This document shows positions 3,546 to 19,317 of a DNA stretch of 64,000 bases, piece after piece. The stretch is from Octopus sinensis. Its lineage: Eukaryota. The notes under the pieces were generated by a model. It had not been told where the DNA came from. It saw nothing but the letters and a program-made list of their open reading frames with translations, and did no database searches. Every line of letters begins with the position of its first letter. Within the stretch, counting starts at the first letter, position 1. Location: assembly GCF_006345805.1 (NCBI RefSeq), contig NC_042999.1, forward strand, positions 24,924,001 through 24,988,000, read 5' to 3'. A program made the position numbers and the translations under genes.

Positions 3546-3625
3546 CTCAAATTCATCCAGAACAATTTTACATAAAGCATCTAAATTGTTAAGTCCATCA
3601 ACTAAAACTTCCACAGCAGGAATAA
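3546..3625 (-). CDS. POLR1D: AC19-like exon (IPAVEVLVDGLNNLDALCKIVLDEFE)
   Basis: ctttag acceptor, GAG|gtaagt donor. Confidence 0.9.
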
Positions 3626-6600
3626 CTAAAGACAAAGACAGAAAAGAAAATTAAAATAAATAAGACTGTATTTTGCTACACACATACACACACTCTTTAC
3701 TCTTTTACTTGTTTCAGTCATTTGACTGCGGCCATGCTGGAGCACCGCCTTTAGTCGAGCAAATCGACCCCAGTACTTATTCTATCGGTCTCTTTTGCCG
3801 AACCGCTAAGTTACAGGGACATAAACACACCAGCATCGTTGTCAAGCAATGCTAGGGGGACAAACACAGACACACAAACACACTCACACATATATATATA
3901 CATACACATATACAACGGACTTCTTTGAGTTTCTGTCTACCAAGTCCACTCACAAGGCTTTGGTCGGCCCGAGGCTATAGAAGAAGACACTTGCCCAAGA
4001 TGCCATGCAGTGGGACTGAACCCGGAACCATGTGGTTGGTTAGCAAGCTACTTACCACACAGCCACACATGTATATAATATATATATTTGTTTATACACA
4101 AACTGCATATAACCTATATTTCTAAACAAAAAAAATTGTTTTCTCCAGATCATCATCATCATCATCATCATCGTTTAACGTCCGTTCTCCATGCTAGCAT
4201 GGGTTGGACGGTTCGACCGGGGTTCTGGGAAGCCAGAAGGCTGCACCAGGCTCCAGTCTAATCTGGCAATGTTTCTACAGCTGGATGCCCTTCCTAACGC
4301 CAACCACTCCAGATGTAGTTGATTATTTACATACATTATGCTTATGCACACCCATGTAGGATAATTTGCATAGAGTAGTTCATATACTATTCCTCAAATA
4401 CATGCCACTTGATTCTTGAGATTATTTTTTACTTATTCAAAGTCAGGTCCGATTGGCACCAAGCAATGGAAGTGGGGATTATTTCAATAACTCAAGAATT
4501 TACCCACATAAACTTGTATCTAACCTAACACTACGAAACTGGTTATTAACCTATGTGGAAACTGTTTTAATTAAAATACCCCACTACAAAATGACAACAT
4601 TTTATCTGCCCTTCCATGTGTTGTATCGAATGTAGACAACCTATGTCACAAAAATATCACACCCTGCAGAATGCCAGCATCCTGTTTGCTCCAACACTTG
4701 AATTTACCAATAAAATAAATGATGTCACTGTAATGGCAAAGAGAATTATTCAATTTGAAGTGACCAACAGCAGTCTAAAGAGAATTATACAACTTGAAGT
4801 GACCAACAGCAGTCTAAAGAGAATTATACAATTTGAAGTGACCAACAGCAGTCTAAAGAGAATTATACAATTTGAAGTGACCAACAGCAGCAGTCTAAAT
4901 ACTTTCACTTAGAGTCACTTAAAATTTATTTAAACTCCAGTCTACCTTGAAACATTTGTGATGATATGAACATGTTCTATAACCCTAAAATCTAAGTAAT
5001 CTAACTGTTGTGTATGTGTGTGTGTTGAATGTACAATGAGTTAAAGAGTATATAATACATATTATATTTATTTGTTCAAAGATGATGATTCACCATCTCT
5101 ATTCAGAGTTGCCATGAAAATAATTTCTGTACACTAATTAAATTCAGAATAGATCAAATATGGGAAATGACATAAAATCTCTGTATTTCAATAATTAATA
5201 ACTAATCCAAGTGTTCAGTAAAATGAGTGGTCAAAGTGAAGTTGTGAAAGTGAAAGTTGTGAAAATCATTAGTGACAGGAGTGTCTGGCTAGGTTCTCAC
5301 ACCAGATACTCTAGAGCCCTTACTTGAACGTTTGTATAGAATAACATATAGTAGTAATATTTTACACGAGGGAAAGAAGTGGAAACTTGTTCCATATAAG
5401 AAATAACAGTGTACAAGGGACAAAATAACCAGTTACTTTTAGAGAAATAAACTATTTTTTATACACAGATCTGTAATATTTCAAAAGCTAATGTAAAGCA
5501 AAGGTTTTGAAGGGTTGTAGGTATCACACAGAATGTTGTGAGGGTAGGGGTAAGAATACACAAATATGAAAGAAACTGTTAGAAAACTGACTGATTTTCC
5601 CCAGTTCCTTTATAAAAAAACACATTATGCAATCCATTGCCCTTGTTGAAGACACAACTTGAGCCTCAGGTGTCTTAAATGGAGTCTACTCTGTTAGAAG
5701 GATTGAGATGTTGTGTCTCAGGAGATATAATATATTAATGTATGGTTACACTTTTCAGTATCAACAGCTTTTTTTATTTGTTATGCTTTATCCTTCCTTC
5801 TGCTATATACCCAGTTGCCTCAGAATCCTATGAGAGTCATGATAGTTATCTTTCTTCCTCTGAGTAAGAAAAACGTTTTGTTTATCACGTTAAGGAAGAA
5901 AATAGAAAAAGTGAAGTTGAGTAACACTGGAAAATAAAAGGATTAAAAAGTATAACATACCTTTGCTTTGTATCCGGAAATTTATCTGTTTGTCAAAGGG
6001 ATGAGGTACACCATATCCACAAAATTCCACTCTAGGACTGAAACATAAAAGCATCATCAGTTACACCACCTCTACTCATGTCTTACAACTGCCTTCATTG
6101 GCAATATATTATCTCTCCTGAGACACAACATCTCAATCCTTCTAACAGAGTAGACTCCACTTAAGGCACCTGAGATCCAAGTTGTGTGTTAAAGAAGGGT
6201 AATGTGGATTGCACAATTCTTTTTTCAAAAAAAAAAAAAGGAACTACTGAAAATCAGTCAGTTTCCACATCAAACAGTTTTTCCCACTTTTGGCTCCTAC
6301 CAAAGTCGCCTTACTGGCACCTGTGCCGCTGGCATGTGTAAAAGGATTCGAGCAAGGTCGTTGCCAATACCACCTGACTGGCCCCCGTGCCGGGGCATGT
6401 AAAAAGCACCCATTACACTCTCGGAGTGGTTGGCGTTAGGAAGGGCATCCAGCTGTAGAAACTCTGCCAAATAAAGATTGGAGCCTGGTGCAACCATCTG
6501 GTTCGCCAGCCCTCAGTCAAAATCGTCCAACCCATGCTAGCACAGAAAGCGGACGTTTAACGATGATGATGATGCACAGTAGCTCTAACACCATCTTTTT

Positions 6601-9600
6601 ACCTTCCCATTCTGACAGTCAACTTTATATTCTAAGATGGCCAGCTATTACTTTCTAATAACATCTTCACAAGCTACAGAATTTTTCAGTCTATTTCCTC
6701 ATATTAGCTATGTCCTTTATCTGGTTAACCACCAAACTTTTAGGGGTAGAACTGATTGTTGGGTAGCCTATGGCAGGCTGGTAGAATCATGTGACTGTTC
6801 CCACAGATACACTGCAATGGTTTAAGTTTTGAACATATAGCTTTATGGAACGGTGCCTTATGGAACTTGCCATAGTGAAAGAACATTAAGCTTAAATAAT
6901 AATTACTCTCTTAATATACAAATCTATGAACTTACATTAAAAAAAGCCCGAAGATATCTCACATTTGATAACAGAAAATAGAAATATTTAAAAAAAAAAA
7001 AAAACAGCACAGCTGAGGTATGGCTGCATGGTTAAGAAGTTTCATTGCTACATGATTTCGGATTCAAACCCATGGCACTTGGACAGGTGTTGTCTACCAT
7101 AACCTTGGGTTGCCCAATACTGTGTGTGTAAATGTTTTGTATATTTATAGGTAGTGGAGTGTTTACAAATGCACACAGAATTAGTTTTTGAAAAAGTAAA
7201 AGATCTCAATATCTTAAAGTAAATATTTATATCTGTTACAGTTCCAGTTTACAGCATACCATTACTCAGAACTTACATCAGCCAACACATAGAAAGCAGA
7301 CATCAAAGGATGTCTAATGATACTGATGAAGTATGTATGTGTGAGTATATTACACTGTTGTAATCGTAATATGGTCATCTAGTATACAGTTAATGCACAA
7401 TTTGAGCCCTGTGGATGGTTGTTACTTTTTTTCTATCAAAAGATTTTACCCAATATACTCTGTGGAGGCACATGGCCTAGTGGTTAGAGCAGCGGACTCG
7501 CGGTCATGGGATCGCAGGTTCGAATCTCAGACCGGACGATATGTGTGTTTATGAGCGAAACACCTAAGTTCCATGCGGCTTCGGTAGAAGGTAATGGCGA
7601 AACTTCTGCTGACTCTTTCGCCACAACTTTCTCTCACTCTTTCCTCCTGCATCTTGCAGCTCACCTGTGATGGACCGGCGTCCCGTCCAGGTGGGGAACC
7701 TATACGCCAAGAAACTGGGAAACCAGCCCTTATGAGCCAGGTATGGCTCGAGAAGGAACAACAAAAACAATATACTCTGAACTATTATCATAGCTCCTTT
7801 TTTATTTCTATATGTCAGTGTGTATATGCCACCAATAAATTGGAATCTTTTAACCTTTACCTGTCTCAGTCATTGGACTGTGACCATGCTGGGGCACTAC
7901 CTTGAAGGGTTTAGTTGAATGACTTGACCCCAGTACTATTTTTTAAAGTCTGGTACTTAATCTGTCAATCTCATGCCAAACTGCTATGTTACAGGGACGA
8001 AAACAAACCAACACTAGTTGTCAAGTGGTGGTGCAGGAAAACACACACACACATATATGACAGGCTTCTTTTAATTTCCATCTACCAATTCCATTCATGA
8101 GACTTTGGTCAACCCAGGGATATAATAGAAGACACCTGACTTGTGTGTAGCAGATGTAAGATTTGTTCTCGTAGACTGGTAGGAATGACTAGTCTCATAC
8201 CATACAGTAAACATCCATGACACGGGCACTGAACCCAGAATATATTTTTCTGTCAGTTTTAGGCCCATTTGTACCAAGATGTACTAAGCCATTAAATTAA
8301 ATATGAAAACATTTGATGGCAGTGCTTCATCATGGCCACTGTCCCATAAAAGGATAGAAGAATAAAGAATAAGCATTAACTATAATAAACCATAAAGGAA
8401 CAAATGATTTGGTCGTTACTTACTCTTTCATGATAACATAACGTAATGCATTGCCAAGTGTGTGGTCTTCATTGTGTAAGATAAATGTCTGGCTGAGGGA
8501 GTCAATACTTTCTAGATGTGGTAGCTGTAACATAAAATCACAGAAAGTGTATGTGTTTGAATATATATATTATATATATATATATATGATTATTATTATT
8601 TGAGGGAATAAAATCCAAACTTACAAGGAAAAAGAATTCAATTTAGAAATACTAAATCAAATTCCACACAATATAATATATATATATATAAATATTAGAA
8701 AAAACCCACCTTTTATCAATTCAAAATGAATAATTAAATTACACCATCTAGAAAATTACATATAAGAGAAAAGTTAAAATTTTGTAATTTACTTAATTTT
8801 TACTTTTTATTGTTTAATTTTAACTTTTCTATTATATGTAATTTTCTAGATGGTGTAATTTAATTATTCATTTTGAATTGATAAAAGGTGGTTTTTTTTC
8901 TAATATTTTTATATATATATACACACACATATATCAATAATATTAATACACTTAGTTTTGTTTGTTTTTATACGTACCTGTGGTGTCACACTTCAAAGGA
9001 AGAGGTAAAAAGATTGAAGGGAGAGGTACAAAAAAAAAAAAAAGAGAAATAAAAGGTATTAAGCTGTTATGTTTTAATATAGTATTATTAACTTGGATTG
9101 CATTACTCGAATGCAAGCCAATAATGGAGTCAATATGTGAGCAAATACAACACAATATACACTCAAAAATATGCACTGATTAAAAAAAACAGCAGAACCT
9201 AAAGATCCACATGCAAAAAGTATCACACCACTTACAAAACAAACTAGTATTTAATCGACCCCGAAAGGATGAAAGGCAAAGTCAACCTCTGCGGAATTTG
9301 AACTCAGAACGTAGCGGCAGATGAAATACCACTAAGCATTTCGCCTGGTGTGCTAACGATTCTGCCAGCTCGCTGCCTTAAACTGAAATTTGCATGGAAT
9401 CTGTTGGAATGGAGCAAAAATCCATATTCACAAATATTCTGAGCAATAATATAGTAAAATAAGCTGAATCATTGAGATTTTCCAGTCAATGAAACTGAGG
9501 GGATTGAAGCAAGAAAGTAAAATGATTGGGTAGCAAGTTATATTCAATCCACAAGAGAAATTCATAAAGTGATTTTCCCTTGAAGCAAGTGAAAATCAAA

Positions 9601-19040: not shown

Positions 19041-19185
19041 ACACGCATTCATTAACTTTGTACATTTGTGTACTTATAGGCATATCAATAAATATAACCA
19101 ACAAGTGAGTCCATCCTGTACAATTATTGCGGGACAAAAATATGTTTTAAAAAAATAACAAACATTATAAAAACAAAACTCCTAC

Positions 19186-19317
19186 CTCTAACTCTTCTTG
19201 ATCATCAGGTGTAAGGGCAGAAGTCTCCAACATGCATTCAATCACAGGCTCAGGGACTAAATTGGTTTCAAGAAGTTGTCTGTTTTCTTTTAAGACTTTA
19301 TGTAAATATTTATTCAT
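19186..19317 (-). CDS. CARD domain exon A (MNKYLHKVLKENRQLLETNLVPEPVIECMLETSALTPDDQEELE)
   Basis: aaaATGa start, acceptor at 19344-19345, GAG|gtagga donor; N-terminal CARD helix pattern (L..NR..L...L....V...M......LT..D.EE). Confidence 0.85.

What the first reader, a model, noticed from the sequence alone, without database searches (positions are those of the whole stretch)
3546..19317. Putative CARD death-fold domain fused in frame to the Pol I/III subunit AC19 (POLR1D)
Seen: two minus-strand exons (19317-19186, 15504-15348) encode a typical six-helix CARD of about 90 aa and end in phase 1. The next good exon downstream is the phase-1 micro-exon 10749-10724, which leads straight into the AC19 core. 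The join gives an uninterrupted ORF of at least 191 aa: ...LANVLKESRKVPTT-DFDDENRKS-LPHLE...EDHTLGN.... I found no convincing separate terminal exon for the CARD part between 15348 and 11200. Known: AC19 pairs with AC40 as the alpha-like assembly platform shared by Pol I and Pol III; CARDs mediate homotypic caspase and innate-immune signalling (Apaf-1, RAIDD, RIG-I/MAVS); mammalian Pol III feeds RIG-I by transcribing AT-rich DNA. I know of no CARD-AC19 fusion. Inference: a lineage-specific polymerase subunit that could link rRNA/tRNA synthesis or nucleolar stress to caspase or antiviral signalling. A phase match alone happens by chance one time in three.
Basis: partly seen in the sequence, partly recalled or inferred. 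Interest (0 to 1): 0.9.

Follow-up and report, generated by a model that had tools for sequence, protein, structure and literature searches.

The report
CARD-tagged Pol I/III subunit AC19
In octopuses and cuttlefish, the only octopus-type gene for the small RNA polymerase I/III subunit AC19 (POLR1D) carries a cell-death-type CARD domain at its N-terminus; the fusion is real, expressed and conserved, sits in public databases under the plain polymerase name, and I found no paper that discusses it.

Summary
That protein is letter-identical to RefSeq XP_029634168.1 ("RPAC2 [Octopus sinensis]"). Residues 7-87 are a CARD (Pfam 48 bits; AlphaFold model superposes on the Apaf-1 CARD, TM 0.88). Residues 118-188 are the AC19 core (TM about 0.8, rmsd 1.1 A to human RPAC2). 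A disordered linker of about 25 residues joins them.

The same architecture and exon structure occur in O. bimaculoides, O. vulgaris, Argonauta hians and the cuttlefish Acanthosepion pharaonis. Two independent cuttlefish RNA contigs, one ending in an A-run like a poly(A) tail, carry the uninterrupted CARD-AC19 ORF and map exon by exon onto the cuttlefish locus. The CARD is as constrained as the polymerase core (dN/dS 0.03 against 0.04).

I found no plain cephalopod AC19 protein. I also found no conserved internal start exon and no second copy of the CARD. Gastropod and annelid POLR1D genes are plain.

So coleoid Pol I and Pol III most probably all carry a tethered CARD. What the CARD binds is unknown; docking of a CARD partner is inference. 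The protein is publicly annotated, but four literature searches returned nothing on it.

The parts
21633..21780 (-). Approximate non-coding 5' exon and promoter-proximal region of the CARD-AC19 gene. It lies head-to-head with NOL6.
   Evidence: The N-terminal extension of the O. vulgaris 233-aa model P0143 maps to window 21689-21642. Cuttlefish mRNA has an equivalent non-coding first exon 2.8 kb upstream of CARD exon 1. The exact ends of this exon were not determined.
19186..19343 (-). CARD exon 1. A likely acceptor sits at 19345-19344, the ATG at 19317, and the coding part is 19317-19186 (44 codons, ends in phase 0).
   Evidence: CARD profile positions 2-38. Identical to residues 1-44 of P0129.
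15348..15504 (-). CARD exon 2 (52 codons plus 1 nt, ends in phase 1). It encodes CARD helices 4-6 and the start of the linker.
   Evidence: genome scan hit, 25.4 bits; 26.3 bits, CARD positions 42-83.
10724..10749 (-). 26-nt micro-exon (DFDDENRKS). It is the remnant of the coding part of the ancestral POLR1D first exon.
   Evidence: It is conserved as an exon in Argonauta and Acanthosepion. It corresponds to exon 1 (M plus 10-15 aa) of plain POLR1D in Pomacea and Owenia.
8424..8524 (-). AC19 core exon (LPHLE...EDHTLGN...IMK, ends in phase 2).
   Evidence: (RNA_pol_L_2, 29.4 bits).
5961..6037 (-). AC19 core exon (PRVEFCGYGVPHP...IQSK, ends in phase 1).
   Evidence: (33 bits).
3546..3625 (-). 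AC19 C-terminal helix exon (ends ...LDEFE, donor GAG|gtaagt). The final 12-codon exon lies outside the window at C3:24921514-24921552 (L020:7552-7514, minus strand).
10907..10919 (-). Candidate alternative first coding exon (ATG CCG TCA AGA G|gtaggt, 'MPSR', phase 1). It could give a plain AC19. I judge it a chance occurrence.
   Evidence: Found by scan. The sequence is not alignable in Argonauta, and Argonauta has no ATG/phase-1 donor candidate in that intron at all.
22462..35858 (+). Neighbouring gene NOL6 (Nrap), transcribed divergently from the CARD-AC19 5' end. It runs on further to the right in the window.
   Evidence: tblastx with the Argonauta upstream neighbour matches at window 22462-22563. 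Nrap Pfam hits map to window 32469-32630, 33981-34133 and 35763-35858. Argonauta has the same arrangement.

Best explanation
This is the single-copy POLR1D (AC19/RPAC2) gene of Octopus sinensis.

Shown:
- In coleoid cephalopods the gene has two extra 5' coding exons that encode a complete CARD.
- One transcript, starting from a non-coding exon next to the divergently transcribed NOL6 gene, runs through CARD exon 1, CARD exon 2, a 26-nt micro-exon and four AC19 exons.
- It encodes a 23.4-kDa protein, against about 13.6 kDa for plain AC19.
- The micro-exon is what is left of the ancestral first coding exon.

Inferred:
- The fusion most likely arose when POLR1D came to lie downstream of a CARD gene and the CARD exons were spliced onto it. 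No independent copy of that CARD remains.
- Because this is the only octopus-type AC19 gene and no plain isoform is seen, every Pol I and Pol III should carry the CARD. It would hang on a flexible, acidic linker of about 25 residues at the AC19 N-terminus, which is an unmodelled tail on the enzyme's surface in solved polymerases.
- Most likely mechanism (my estimate about 0.4): the CARD is a homotypic docking site. It either brings a CARD-bearing partner to the polymerases and nucleolus, or lets such a partner sense the state of free against assembled AC19. The partner could be one of the many CARD-caspases or a CARD adaptor of this genome. This would couple rRNA/tRNA synthesis to a death or stress pathway.
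For: Gene model:
- The splice of window exons equals RefSeq XP_029634168.1 exactly.

Transcript evidence:
- Logan contigs from SRR8281693 (1761 nt, ending in an A-run like a poly(A) tail) and SRR8281664 carry the uninterrupted 202-aa CARD-AC19 ORF.
- They map to the A. pharaonis locus in blocks that coincide with the mapped exons: a non-coding 5' exon, both CARD exons, the micro-exon and the AC19 exons.

Conservation:
- The same 7-coding-exon structure and phases occur in Argonauta and Acanthosepion.
- The same protein is annotated in O. bimaculoides (three transcript accessions, one protein) and O. vulgaris.
- dN/dS between O. sinensis and Argonauta is 0.032 for the CARD, 0.040 for the AC19 core and 0.30 for the linker.
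- Octopus-cuttlefish identity is 61% in the CARD and 77% in the core.

Domains:
- Pfam gives CARD E 9.7e-13 and RNA_pol_L_2 E 7e-26 on the whole protein.
- The AlphaFold2 model shows a six-helix bundle with a split helix 1, a disordered stretch at 93-111 and a confident AC19 fold.
- Foldseek matches the Apaf-1 CARD (TM 0.87-0.88, rmsd 1.5-1.6 A) and human RPAC2 (TM about 0.8, rmsd 1.1 A).

Sole copy:
- The genome scan finds no other close AC19.
- CARD exon 2 is single copy.
- No cephalopod AC19 of 52-165 aa exists in a 5.8-billion-protein collection.

Origin:
- Pomacea and Owenia POLR1D are plain. They share the last three intron positions, and their short exon 1 sits where the micro-exon is.

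Possible partners:
- At least 8 places in this genome have a CARD hit and a caspase hit adjacent on the same strand, mostly within one open frame.
Against: - I could not inspect RNA reads from Octopus sinensis itself. The direct transcript evidence is from cuttlefish, and the octopus evidence is from gene models.
- A candidate internal start exon (10919-10907) exists in O. sinensis, although it is not conserved.
- An intronless 'rpc19-like' gene (P0147) is annotated on an unplaced scaffold of this assembly. It looks foreign, but I have not proved that.
- Nothing here shows what the CARD binds, whether it binds anything, or that the full-length protein is the form assembled into polymerase.
- The CARD-to-core arrangement in the model is not confident (pTM 0.46).
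Confidence: 0.85

Rival explanations
1. The fusion transcript is real, but a plain AC19 made from an internal promoter or alternative first exon is the form built into Pol I/III. The CARD form would be a minor or condition-specific isoform.
For: A short ATG exon with a good phase-1 donor lies 158 nt upstream of the micro-exon in O. sinensis. It was one of only two candidates with donor score above 5 in the 13 kb scanned.
Against: That sequence is not conserved in Argonauta, and Argonauta has no ATG/phase-1 candidate in the intron. No plain cephalopod AC19 protein of 52-165 aa is in the collection. All three O. bimaculoides transcript accessions encode the 203-aa form. The CARD evolves under the same constraint as the core.
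Confidence: 0.08
2. The CARD acts mainly through self-association or as an assembly aid. It would cluster polymerases or AC19-AC40 intermediates, or stabilise the subunit, and it has nothing to do with caspases or immune signalling.
For: The CARD contains both a strongly acidic stretch (TPDDQEELEQEDE) and an adjacent basic helix (RKTKVKKLLKMVEKKGIK). This is the charge complementarity used in CARD-CARD type I contacts, so homotypic contacts are conceivable (reading of the sequence; established knowledge of CARD interfaces). No close paralogous CARD exists that would mark an obvious partner.
Against: All characterised CARDs work in death or inflammatory signalling. The nearest sequence and structure match is the Apaf-1 CARD. 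Other animals assemble Pol I/III without such a domain.
Confidence: 0.2
3. The CARD-AC19 protein moonlights off the polymerase. A free pool would act as a CARD-only type decoy or regulator of CARD-caspases, and the AC19 part would merely supply constitutive expression and nuclear or nucleolar targeting.
For: Small CARD-only proteins that inhibit caspases are known (ICEBERG appears among the weak PDB matches). The gene sits at a housekeeping, ribosome-biogenesis-type divergent promoter shared with NOL6.
Against: There is no evidence for a free pool. It does not explain why the fusion replaced the plain subunit completely.
Confidence: 0.15
4. The fusion is an annotation or assembly artefact. Two adjacent genes, a CARD gene and POLR1D, were merged by gene predictors or by read-through.
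For: A phase match alone occurs by chance one time in three. The octopus evidence is from predicted models.
Against: Independent spliced cuttlefish RNA contigs carry the fusion, one of them with an A-tail. The junction is conserved across octopods and cuttlefish. The AC19 reading frame has no start codon of its own in the micro-exon or the next exon. No terminal exon for the CARD was found, and no plain AC19 protein was found.
Confidence: 0.02

Closest known systems
POLR1D / RPAC2 / yeast Rpc19 (AC19), the Rpb11-like subunit shared by RNA polymerases I and III
   Same: Residues 110-200 align to human RPAC2 (phmmer E 1.6e-27; 54% identity in the Foldseek alignment; rmsd 1.1 A). The protein has the EDHTLGN and EFCGY motifs and an RNA_pol_L_2 domain. 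Its last three introns are at the same positions as in gastropod and annelid POLR1D.
   Different: The short N-terminal tail, which is absent from the solved models (26-41 residues missing), is preceded by a folded 90-residue CARD encoded by two extra exons. The protein has 203 aa instead of about 115-135.
Apaf-1 CARD (also CED-3, CARD8 and NOD1 CARDs)
   Same: Six-helix death-fold bundle with a split helix 1. Pfam CARD 48 bits. Best solved relatives are Apaf-1 CARD chains (phmmer E about 1.5e-4; Foldseek TM 0.87-0.88 over 90 columns, 24% identity).
   Different: It is not attached to an NB-ARC ATPase, a caspase or another signalling module, but to a core transcription subunit. It has no close CARD relative outside the coleoid fusion proteins: an exhaustive search of 1.84 billion representatives found no other match below E 1e-8.
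Nucleolar NPM1-PIDD-RAIDD platform that activates caspase-2 in mammals (Ando et al. 2017, PMC5461015)
   Same: It is a precedent for CARD-dependent caspase activation taking place in the nucleolus, the compartment where a CARD-bearing Pol I subunit would sit.
   Different: In mammals the CARD is carried by the adaptor RAIDD, which is recruited on DNA damage. It is not built into the polymerase. No functional link is shown here; this is an analogy only.
CARD-only proteins (ICEBERG, CARD16-18)
   Same: A small protein whose only signalling module is a single CARD.
   Different: Those are free-standing caspase-1 decoys of mammals. Here the CARD is covalently joined to an essential enzyme subunit, and it is most similar to Apaf-1-type CARDs.

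Membership tests
CARD (death-fold superfamily) | Sequence match to the CARD profile above the curated threshold | tested here: met
   PF00619 scores 48.4 bits (cut-off 23.9), E 9.7e-13, residues 7-87 covering profile positions 2-82 of 85. PF16739 CARD_2 scores 31 bits. The cuttlefish orthologue scores 46.8 bits.
CARD (death-fold superfamily) | Six-helix antiparallel bundle with helix 1 broken into H1a/H1b | tested here: met
   The AlphaFold2 model has helices 3-11/13-19, 22-31, 37-43, 49-63, 65-77 and 81-89, with pLDDT 77-91. It superposes on the Apaf-1 CARD with TM 0.87-0.88 and rmsd 1.5-1.6 A. This is a prediction, not a solved structure.
CARD (death-fold superfamily) | Homotypic CARD-CARD binding or filament formation | not testable with these tools
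   No multimer prediction or experiment was available. Candidate partners exist: at least 8 CARD-caspase ORFs in the genome.
AC19 / POLR1D (RPAC2) | Rpb11-like dimerisation domain closer to AC19 than to Rpb11 | tested here: met
   RNA_pol_L_2 scores 90 bits. PDB matches are RPAC2 at E 1.6e-27 against RPB11 at E 4e-12. The RPB11-like genes of this genome lie elsewhere (L011, L014).
AC19 / POLR1D (RPAC2) | Orthology: single gene with conserved intron positions shared with plain POLR1D of other lophotrochozoans | tested here: met
   It is the only close AC19 locus in the genome. The introns after ...IMK (phase 2)...IQ(T/S)K/RG (phase 1) and ...FE (phase 0) are shared with Pomacea and Owenia.
AC19 / POLR1D (RPAC2) | Pairs with AC40 and is incorporated into Pol I and Pol III | not testable with these tools
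   Inferred from three facts: it is the sole AC19 gene, its core has dN/dS 0.04, and its fold is near-identical to human RPAC2.

The most novel reading that the evidence does not exclude
Every RNA polymerase I and III molecule of coleoid cephalopods carries a functional death-fold docking site. It recruits or sequesters a CARD-caspase or CARD adaptor. The state of the rRNA/tRNA transcription machinery (nucleolar stress, unassembled AC19, perhaps cytosolic Pol III activity) would then be wired directly into cell-death or innate-immune signalling. That would make the link a built-in part of the enzyme, rather than one made through separate adaptors as in mammals.
Probability: 0.25. Interest if true: 0.85.

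Novelty: new variant of a known kind. Interest (0 to 1): 0.62.

Why it matters
Core subunits of the nuclear RNA polymerases are among the most architecturally conservative proteins in eukaryotes. Here the sole AC19 gene of a whole animal lineage has carried a folded signalling domain under strong purifying selection since before octopods and cuttlefish split. By published divergence estimates, quoted from memory, that split is roughly 270 million years old.

If the CARD is a working docking site, it gives a simple, testable handle on an open question: how ribosome-biogenesis stress is reported to the death and immune machinery.

It is also a clean example of a new gene architecture. The likely route is that POLR1D was captured downstream of a CARD gene and the old first exon became a micro-exon. 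This happened in a lineage known for large-scale genome reorganisation.

In practice, the protein is annotated simply as 'RPAC2', so this feature is invisible to anyone searching by name.

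Tried and rejected
1. A retrocopy of POLR1D mRNA would record the spliced 5' end, so I looked for one. None exists. The other RNA_pol_L_2 hits are RPB11-like genes (L011, L014, L013) or a divergent intronless AC19-like gene on an unplaced scaffold (L012).

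2. CpG o/e profiling to find an internal promoter between the CARD exons and the micro-exon was uninformative. The only CpG-rich stretch is a 48/63/111-nt tandem repeat at 13339-13901.

3. The scan for an alternative ATG/phase-1 first exon found 10919-10907. It is not conserved, so I rejected it as probably chance.

4. I searched for the donor of the CARD.
   - CARD exon 2 has no paralogue in the genome.
   - Outside the fusion proteins, only weak matches appear (28-36% identity, to multi-CARD proteins) among 1.84 billion representatives.
   - The donor is therefore not traceable.

5. I asked whether P0147 ('rpc19-like [Octopus sinensis]', scaffold C8901) is a genuine plain paralogue.
   - It is a singleton with no homologue at E below 1e-8, not even in the closely related O. 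vulgaris or O. bimaculoides.
   - Its scaffold has CpG o/e of about 0.9, against 0.55 in the window.
   - 20 kb of the scaffold shares no repeat with the repeat-rich window, and it is dense in short ORFs.
   - I treat it as probably foreign DNA. This is not proven.

6. Literature searches: POLR1D + CARD domain + cephalopod (no paper held POLR1D), RPAC2 + caspase recruitment domain, POLR1D + octopus, and the SRA run number. None returned a relevant paper.

7. I could not name the species of the two SRA runs. The protein is 97.5% identical to that of A. pharaonis (5 differences in 202 residues), so it comes from a closely related cuttlefish.

8. Rfam found no RNA family in the window.

Full report
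**What is in the sequence**

The window is Octopus sinensis chromosome-scale contig C3:24924001-24988000.

- CARD exon 1 is 19317-19186. The ATG is at 19317 and the donor is GAG|gtagga.
- CARD exon 2 is 15504-15348, with acceptor tatttag| and donor CAG|gtaggt. It is 157 nt long and ends in phase 1.
- The micro-exon is 10749-10724 (ttcag|...TCA|gtaagt). It is entered in phase 1.
- The AC19 exons are 8524-8424, 6037-5961 and 3625-3546.

Taken one by one, exon 1 matches CARD profile positions 2-38 and exon 2 matches positions 42-83 (26.3 bits, above the curated cut-off). The next two exons match RNA_pol_L_2.

The exon at 3625-3546 ends in a consensus donor, so the gene does not end there. The last coding exon (ESVNTYKSSQQE plus the stop codon, followed by an AATAAA about 130 nt downstream) lies about 2.45 kb beyond the window's left edge, at L020:7552-7514.

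The seven pieces splice into 203 codons. The translation is letter for letter the RefSeq protein XP_029634168.1, named 'DNA-directed RNA polymerases I and III subunit RPAC2 [Octopus sinensis]'.

**Is the fusion real or a prediction artefact?**

A search with the AC19 part alone, restricted by the tool to proteins of 52-165 aa, returned hundreds of plain AC19 proteins from other animals and fungi. It returned no cephalopod protein.

An exhaustive phmmer search of 1.84 billion cluster representatives with CARD exon 2 returned one strong hit, a 202-aa protein with the CARD at residues 1-95 followed by an AC19 core. Its cluster and two sister clusters contain the following:

- Acanthosepion (Sepia) pharaonis CAE1325219;
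- Argonauta hians GAB1599818;
- O. bimaculoides XP_014785713-5 (three transcript accessions, one protein);
- O. vulgaris CAI9719116.

The 202-aa protein itself comes from Logan assemblies of two different sequencing runs, SRR8281693 and SRR8281664. The longer contig has 1761 nt: a 138-nt leader, an uninterrupted 609-nt ORF, a 1-kb trailer and a terminal run of A. Both contigs map to the A. pharaonis genomic locus as a series of blocks (a non-coding first exon, two CARD exons, a micro-exon and four AC19 exons). These blocks coincide with the exons mapped from the protein, which have AG/GT-type boundaries. That is spliced mRNA.

The exon number, boundaries and phases are the same in Octopus, Argonauta (6-kb gene) and Acanthosepion (about 18 kb from the 5' exon to the stop codon).

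**Is there a plain AC19 as well?**

The AC19 reading frame has no start codon in the micro-exon or the following exon. The two ATGs in the micro-exon are out of frame and run into a stop.

A scan of 13 kb for ATG-initiated open stretches ending in a good phase-1 donor found two candidates. One is inside CARD exon 2. The other is a 13-nt 'MPSR' exon at 10919-10907, 158 nt upstream of the micro-exon. The second would give a plain AC19. However, the sequence around it cannot be aligned with Argonauta, and the Argonauta intron contains no such candidate at all. I regard it as chance, with a residual probability of about 0.08 that an internal start is used.

In the genome, RNA_pol_L_2 hits other than this locus are RPB11-like, or they lie on unplaced scaffolds. 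One of the latter encodes an intronless AC19-like protein only 36% identical to the octopus core. It is annotated as 'rpc19-like [Octopus sinensis]' and has these properties:

- It is a singleton with no detectable relative, even in sister octopus species.
- Its scaffold differs from the window in CpG depletion (o/e about 0.9 against 0.55).
- It shares no repeats with the window.
- It is dense in short ORFs.

It is probably foreign DNA in the assembly, though I have not proved this.

**Domains and structure**

- On the whole protein Pfam gives CARD at 48.4 bits (E 9.7e-13, residues 7-87) and RNA_pol_L_2 at 90 bits (residues 118-188).
- Against solved structures, the C-terminal half matches human RPAC2 (E 1.6e-27). 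The N-terminal half matches Apaf-1 CARD chains (E about 1.5e-4), then CARD8, CED-3 and NOD1.
- An AlphaFold2 model (mean pLDDT 80) shows a six-helix bundle with helix 1 split at residue 12, a hallmark of CARDs. Residues 93-111 have pLDDT below 50, and the AC19 fold is confident. The low pTM (0.46) means the two domains are not predicted to pack on each other.
- Foldseek superposes the halves on human RPAC2 in Pol III (TM about 0.8, rmsd 1.1 A) and on the Apaf-1 CARD (TM 0.87-0.88, rmsd 1.5-1.6 A, 24% identity).
- The modelled human and yeast AC19 chains are 26 and 41 residues shorter than their sequences, and alignment starts at residues 33 and 42. This fits the known disordered N-terminal tail at the polymerase surface, which is the position where the CARD is attached.

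**Selection and age**

Between O. sinensis and Argonauta, dN/dS is 0.032 for the CARD, 0.040 for the AC19 core and 0.30 for the linker. dS is about 1.5 in the two domains, so it is near saturation, but dN is very low. Octopus and cuttlefish share 61% of CARD residues and 77% of core residues, but only 32% of the linker. The CARD has been kept as a folded, functional domain since before the octopod-decapodiform split.

**Origin**

Plain POLR1D of the gastropod Pomacea and the annelid Owenia has five coding exons. The last three introns sit at the same positions and phases as in cephalopods. Their first exon (Met plus 10-15 residues, for example MEKKSDENRKRNLEV) corresponds to the cephalopod micro-exon (DFDDENRKS). 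The simplest history is that two CARD exons ending in phase 1 were spliced onto the old first exon, which lost its ATG and became an internal 26-nt exon.

The flanking genes differ between lineages. Pomacea and Owenia share an Arf/Ras-type GTPase neighbour downstream. Octopus and Argonauta have NOL6 head-to-head upstream and COG7 tail-to-tail downstream. The locus was therefore rearranged in the cephalopod lineage.

No independent copy of this CARD survives in the genome, and no close relative exists elsewhere.

**How it most likely works**

Shown: one gene, one protein, two independently folded domains joined by a flexible acidic linker, both domains under strong constraint, and no plain form detected.

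Inferred from established knowledge of Pol I/III: because AC19 with AC40 is the assembly platform of both enzymes and this is the only AC19 gene, the CARD should decorate every Pol I and Pol III.

Inferred from established knowledge of CARDs: the domain mediates homotypic contacts. The genome offers many possible partners. At least eight places have a CARD hit and a caspase hit adjacent on the same strand, mostly within one open frame (a tandem cluster at C26:15.12-15.16 Mb, plus C18:47.066 Mb and others). A multi-exon caspase with a weak CARD hit lies on C3 at 150.4 Mb.

The mammalian precedent for CARD-dependent caspase-2 activation in the nucleolus (PMC5461015) makes a stress-reporting role plausible, but nothing here tests it. 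Self-association or clustering, and a decoy role off the polymerase, are live alternatives.

**Comparison with what is known, and novelty**

As a polymerase subunit it is a bona fide AC19 orthologue. As a domain it is a bona fide CARD of the Apaf-1-like kind. The combination is what is unusual.

It is present in public databases under the plain name RPAC2, with CARD listed among the precomputed Pfam hits. The sequence itself is therefore not new. Four full-text searches found no paper that mentions it, and a 2024 survey of lophotrochozoan apoptosis genes mentions neither 'polymerase' nor 'Octopus'. The library is incomplete, so an existing description cannot be excluded.

I rate it a new variant of a known kind: real, conserved and unexplained, with moderate-to-high interest.

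**Limits**

- I could reach no RNA reads from Octopus itself.
- There are no data from Nautilus or squids.
- The species of the two SRA runs is unnamed. Its protein is 97.5% identical to that of A. pharaonis.
- No multimer modelling was available.
- The 5' non-coding exon in the window is placed only approximately, near 21.63-21.78 kb. The placement comes from the O. vulgaris 233-aa model, whose upstream ORF is probably just leader sequence.

Noticed in passing
G000:C8901:95259-95477 (L012; also L023, L024), G000:C9489:77236-77481 (L013, L025), G000:C12467:82232-82643: Unplaced scaffolds of the assembly carry intronless, divergent copies of housekeeping genes: an AC19-like gene (RefSeq 'rpc19-like [Octopus sinensis]', a singleton), an RPB11-like gene and an Nrap-like gene (the last with stop codons). 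For the two scaffolds I fetched (C8901 and C9489), CpG o/e is about 0.9-1.0 against 0.55 in the window, and none of the window's repeats is present. They look like DNA of another organism (a parasite or symbiont?) annotated as octopus.
   Followed up: partly
window 22462-35858 and beyond (+ strand): NOL6 (Nrap), a nucleolar rRNA-processing gene, is transcribed divergently from the CARD-AC19 gene. The 5' exons are about 0.7-0.8 kb apart, and the interval is relatively CpG-rich (o/e 1.2 at 22251-22750). The same head-to-head pairing occurs in Argonauta, which suggests a shared ribosome-biogenesis promoter.
   Followed up: partly
window 8-2060 and 2805-3063: An (AT)n microsatellite of about 2 kb (about 1075 copies, GC 1.5%) and a second of about 260 bp lie in the last intron of the gene. 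A 157-nt tandem repeat (3 copies, 2060-2526) sits between them.
   Followed up: no
window 13339-13901 (intron between CARD exon 2 and the micro-exon): A GC- and CpG-rich tandem array with nested periods of 48, 63, 111 and 159 nt. It produces a spurious 221-codon open frame on the minus strand (13294-13956). It is not a gene.
   Followed up: partly
window 18654-18884, 17500-17700, 14547-14747, 7530-7781, 3090-3356 (minus-strand frames): At least five copies of one interspersed repeat (a SINE-like element) sit in the introns of this gene. Their translations share strings such as '...FEIQVQQK...VRESCGERV...'. Other repeat families recur nearby, for example at 2034-2665, 6247-6512 and 9565-9949.
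   Followed up: no
G000:C26:15122206-15162007; G000:C24:4966172-5033155; G000:C14:63802209-63868718: There are tandem clusters of single-exon CARD genes. The C26 cluster has at least five places where a CARD hit and a caspase hit lie adjacent on the same strand, mostly within one open frame. The C24 and C14 clusters are CARD hits with no adjacent caspase hit. This is a lineage-specific expansion of CARD signalling genes and a pool of possible partners.
   Followed up: partly
window 3483-3545 (read-through of the donor at 3546); P0146 and P0142: Older O. bimaculoides and cuttlefish models end in 'VSKPV...' or 'VS...SLFQL'. This is the translation of the retained last intron. Intron retention at this position gives a shorter alternative C-terminus in some transcripts or models.
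   Followed up: partly
L026 and L027 (Pomacea and Owenia POLR1D loci): Plain POLR1D is followed by an Arf/Ras-family small GTPase gene in both a gastropod and an annelid. This microsynteny is absent at the cephalopod locus, where the downstream neighbour is COG7 in octopods and a nischarin-like gene in Acanthosepion.
   Followed up: no
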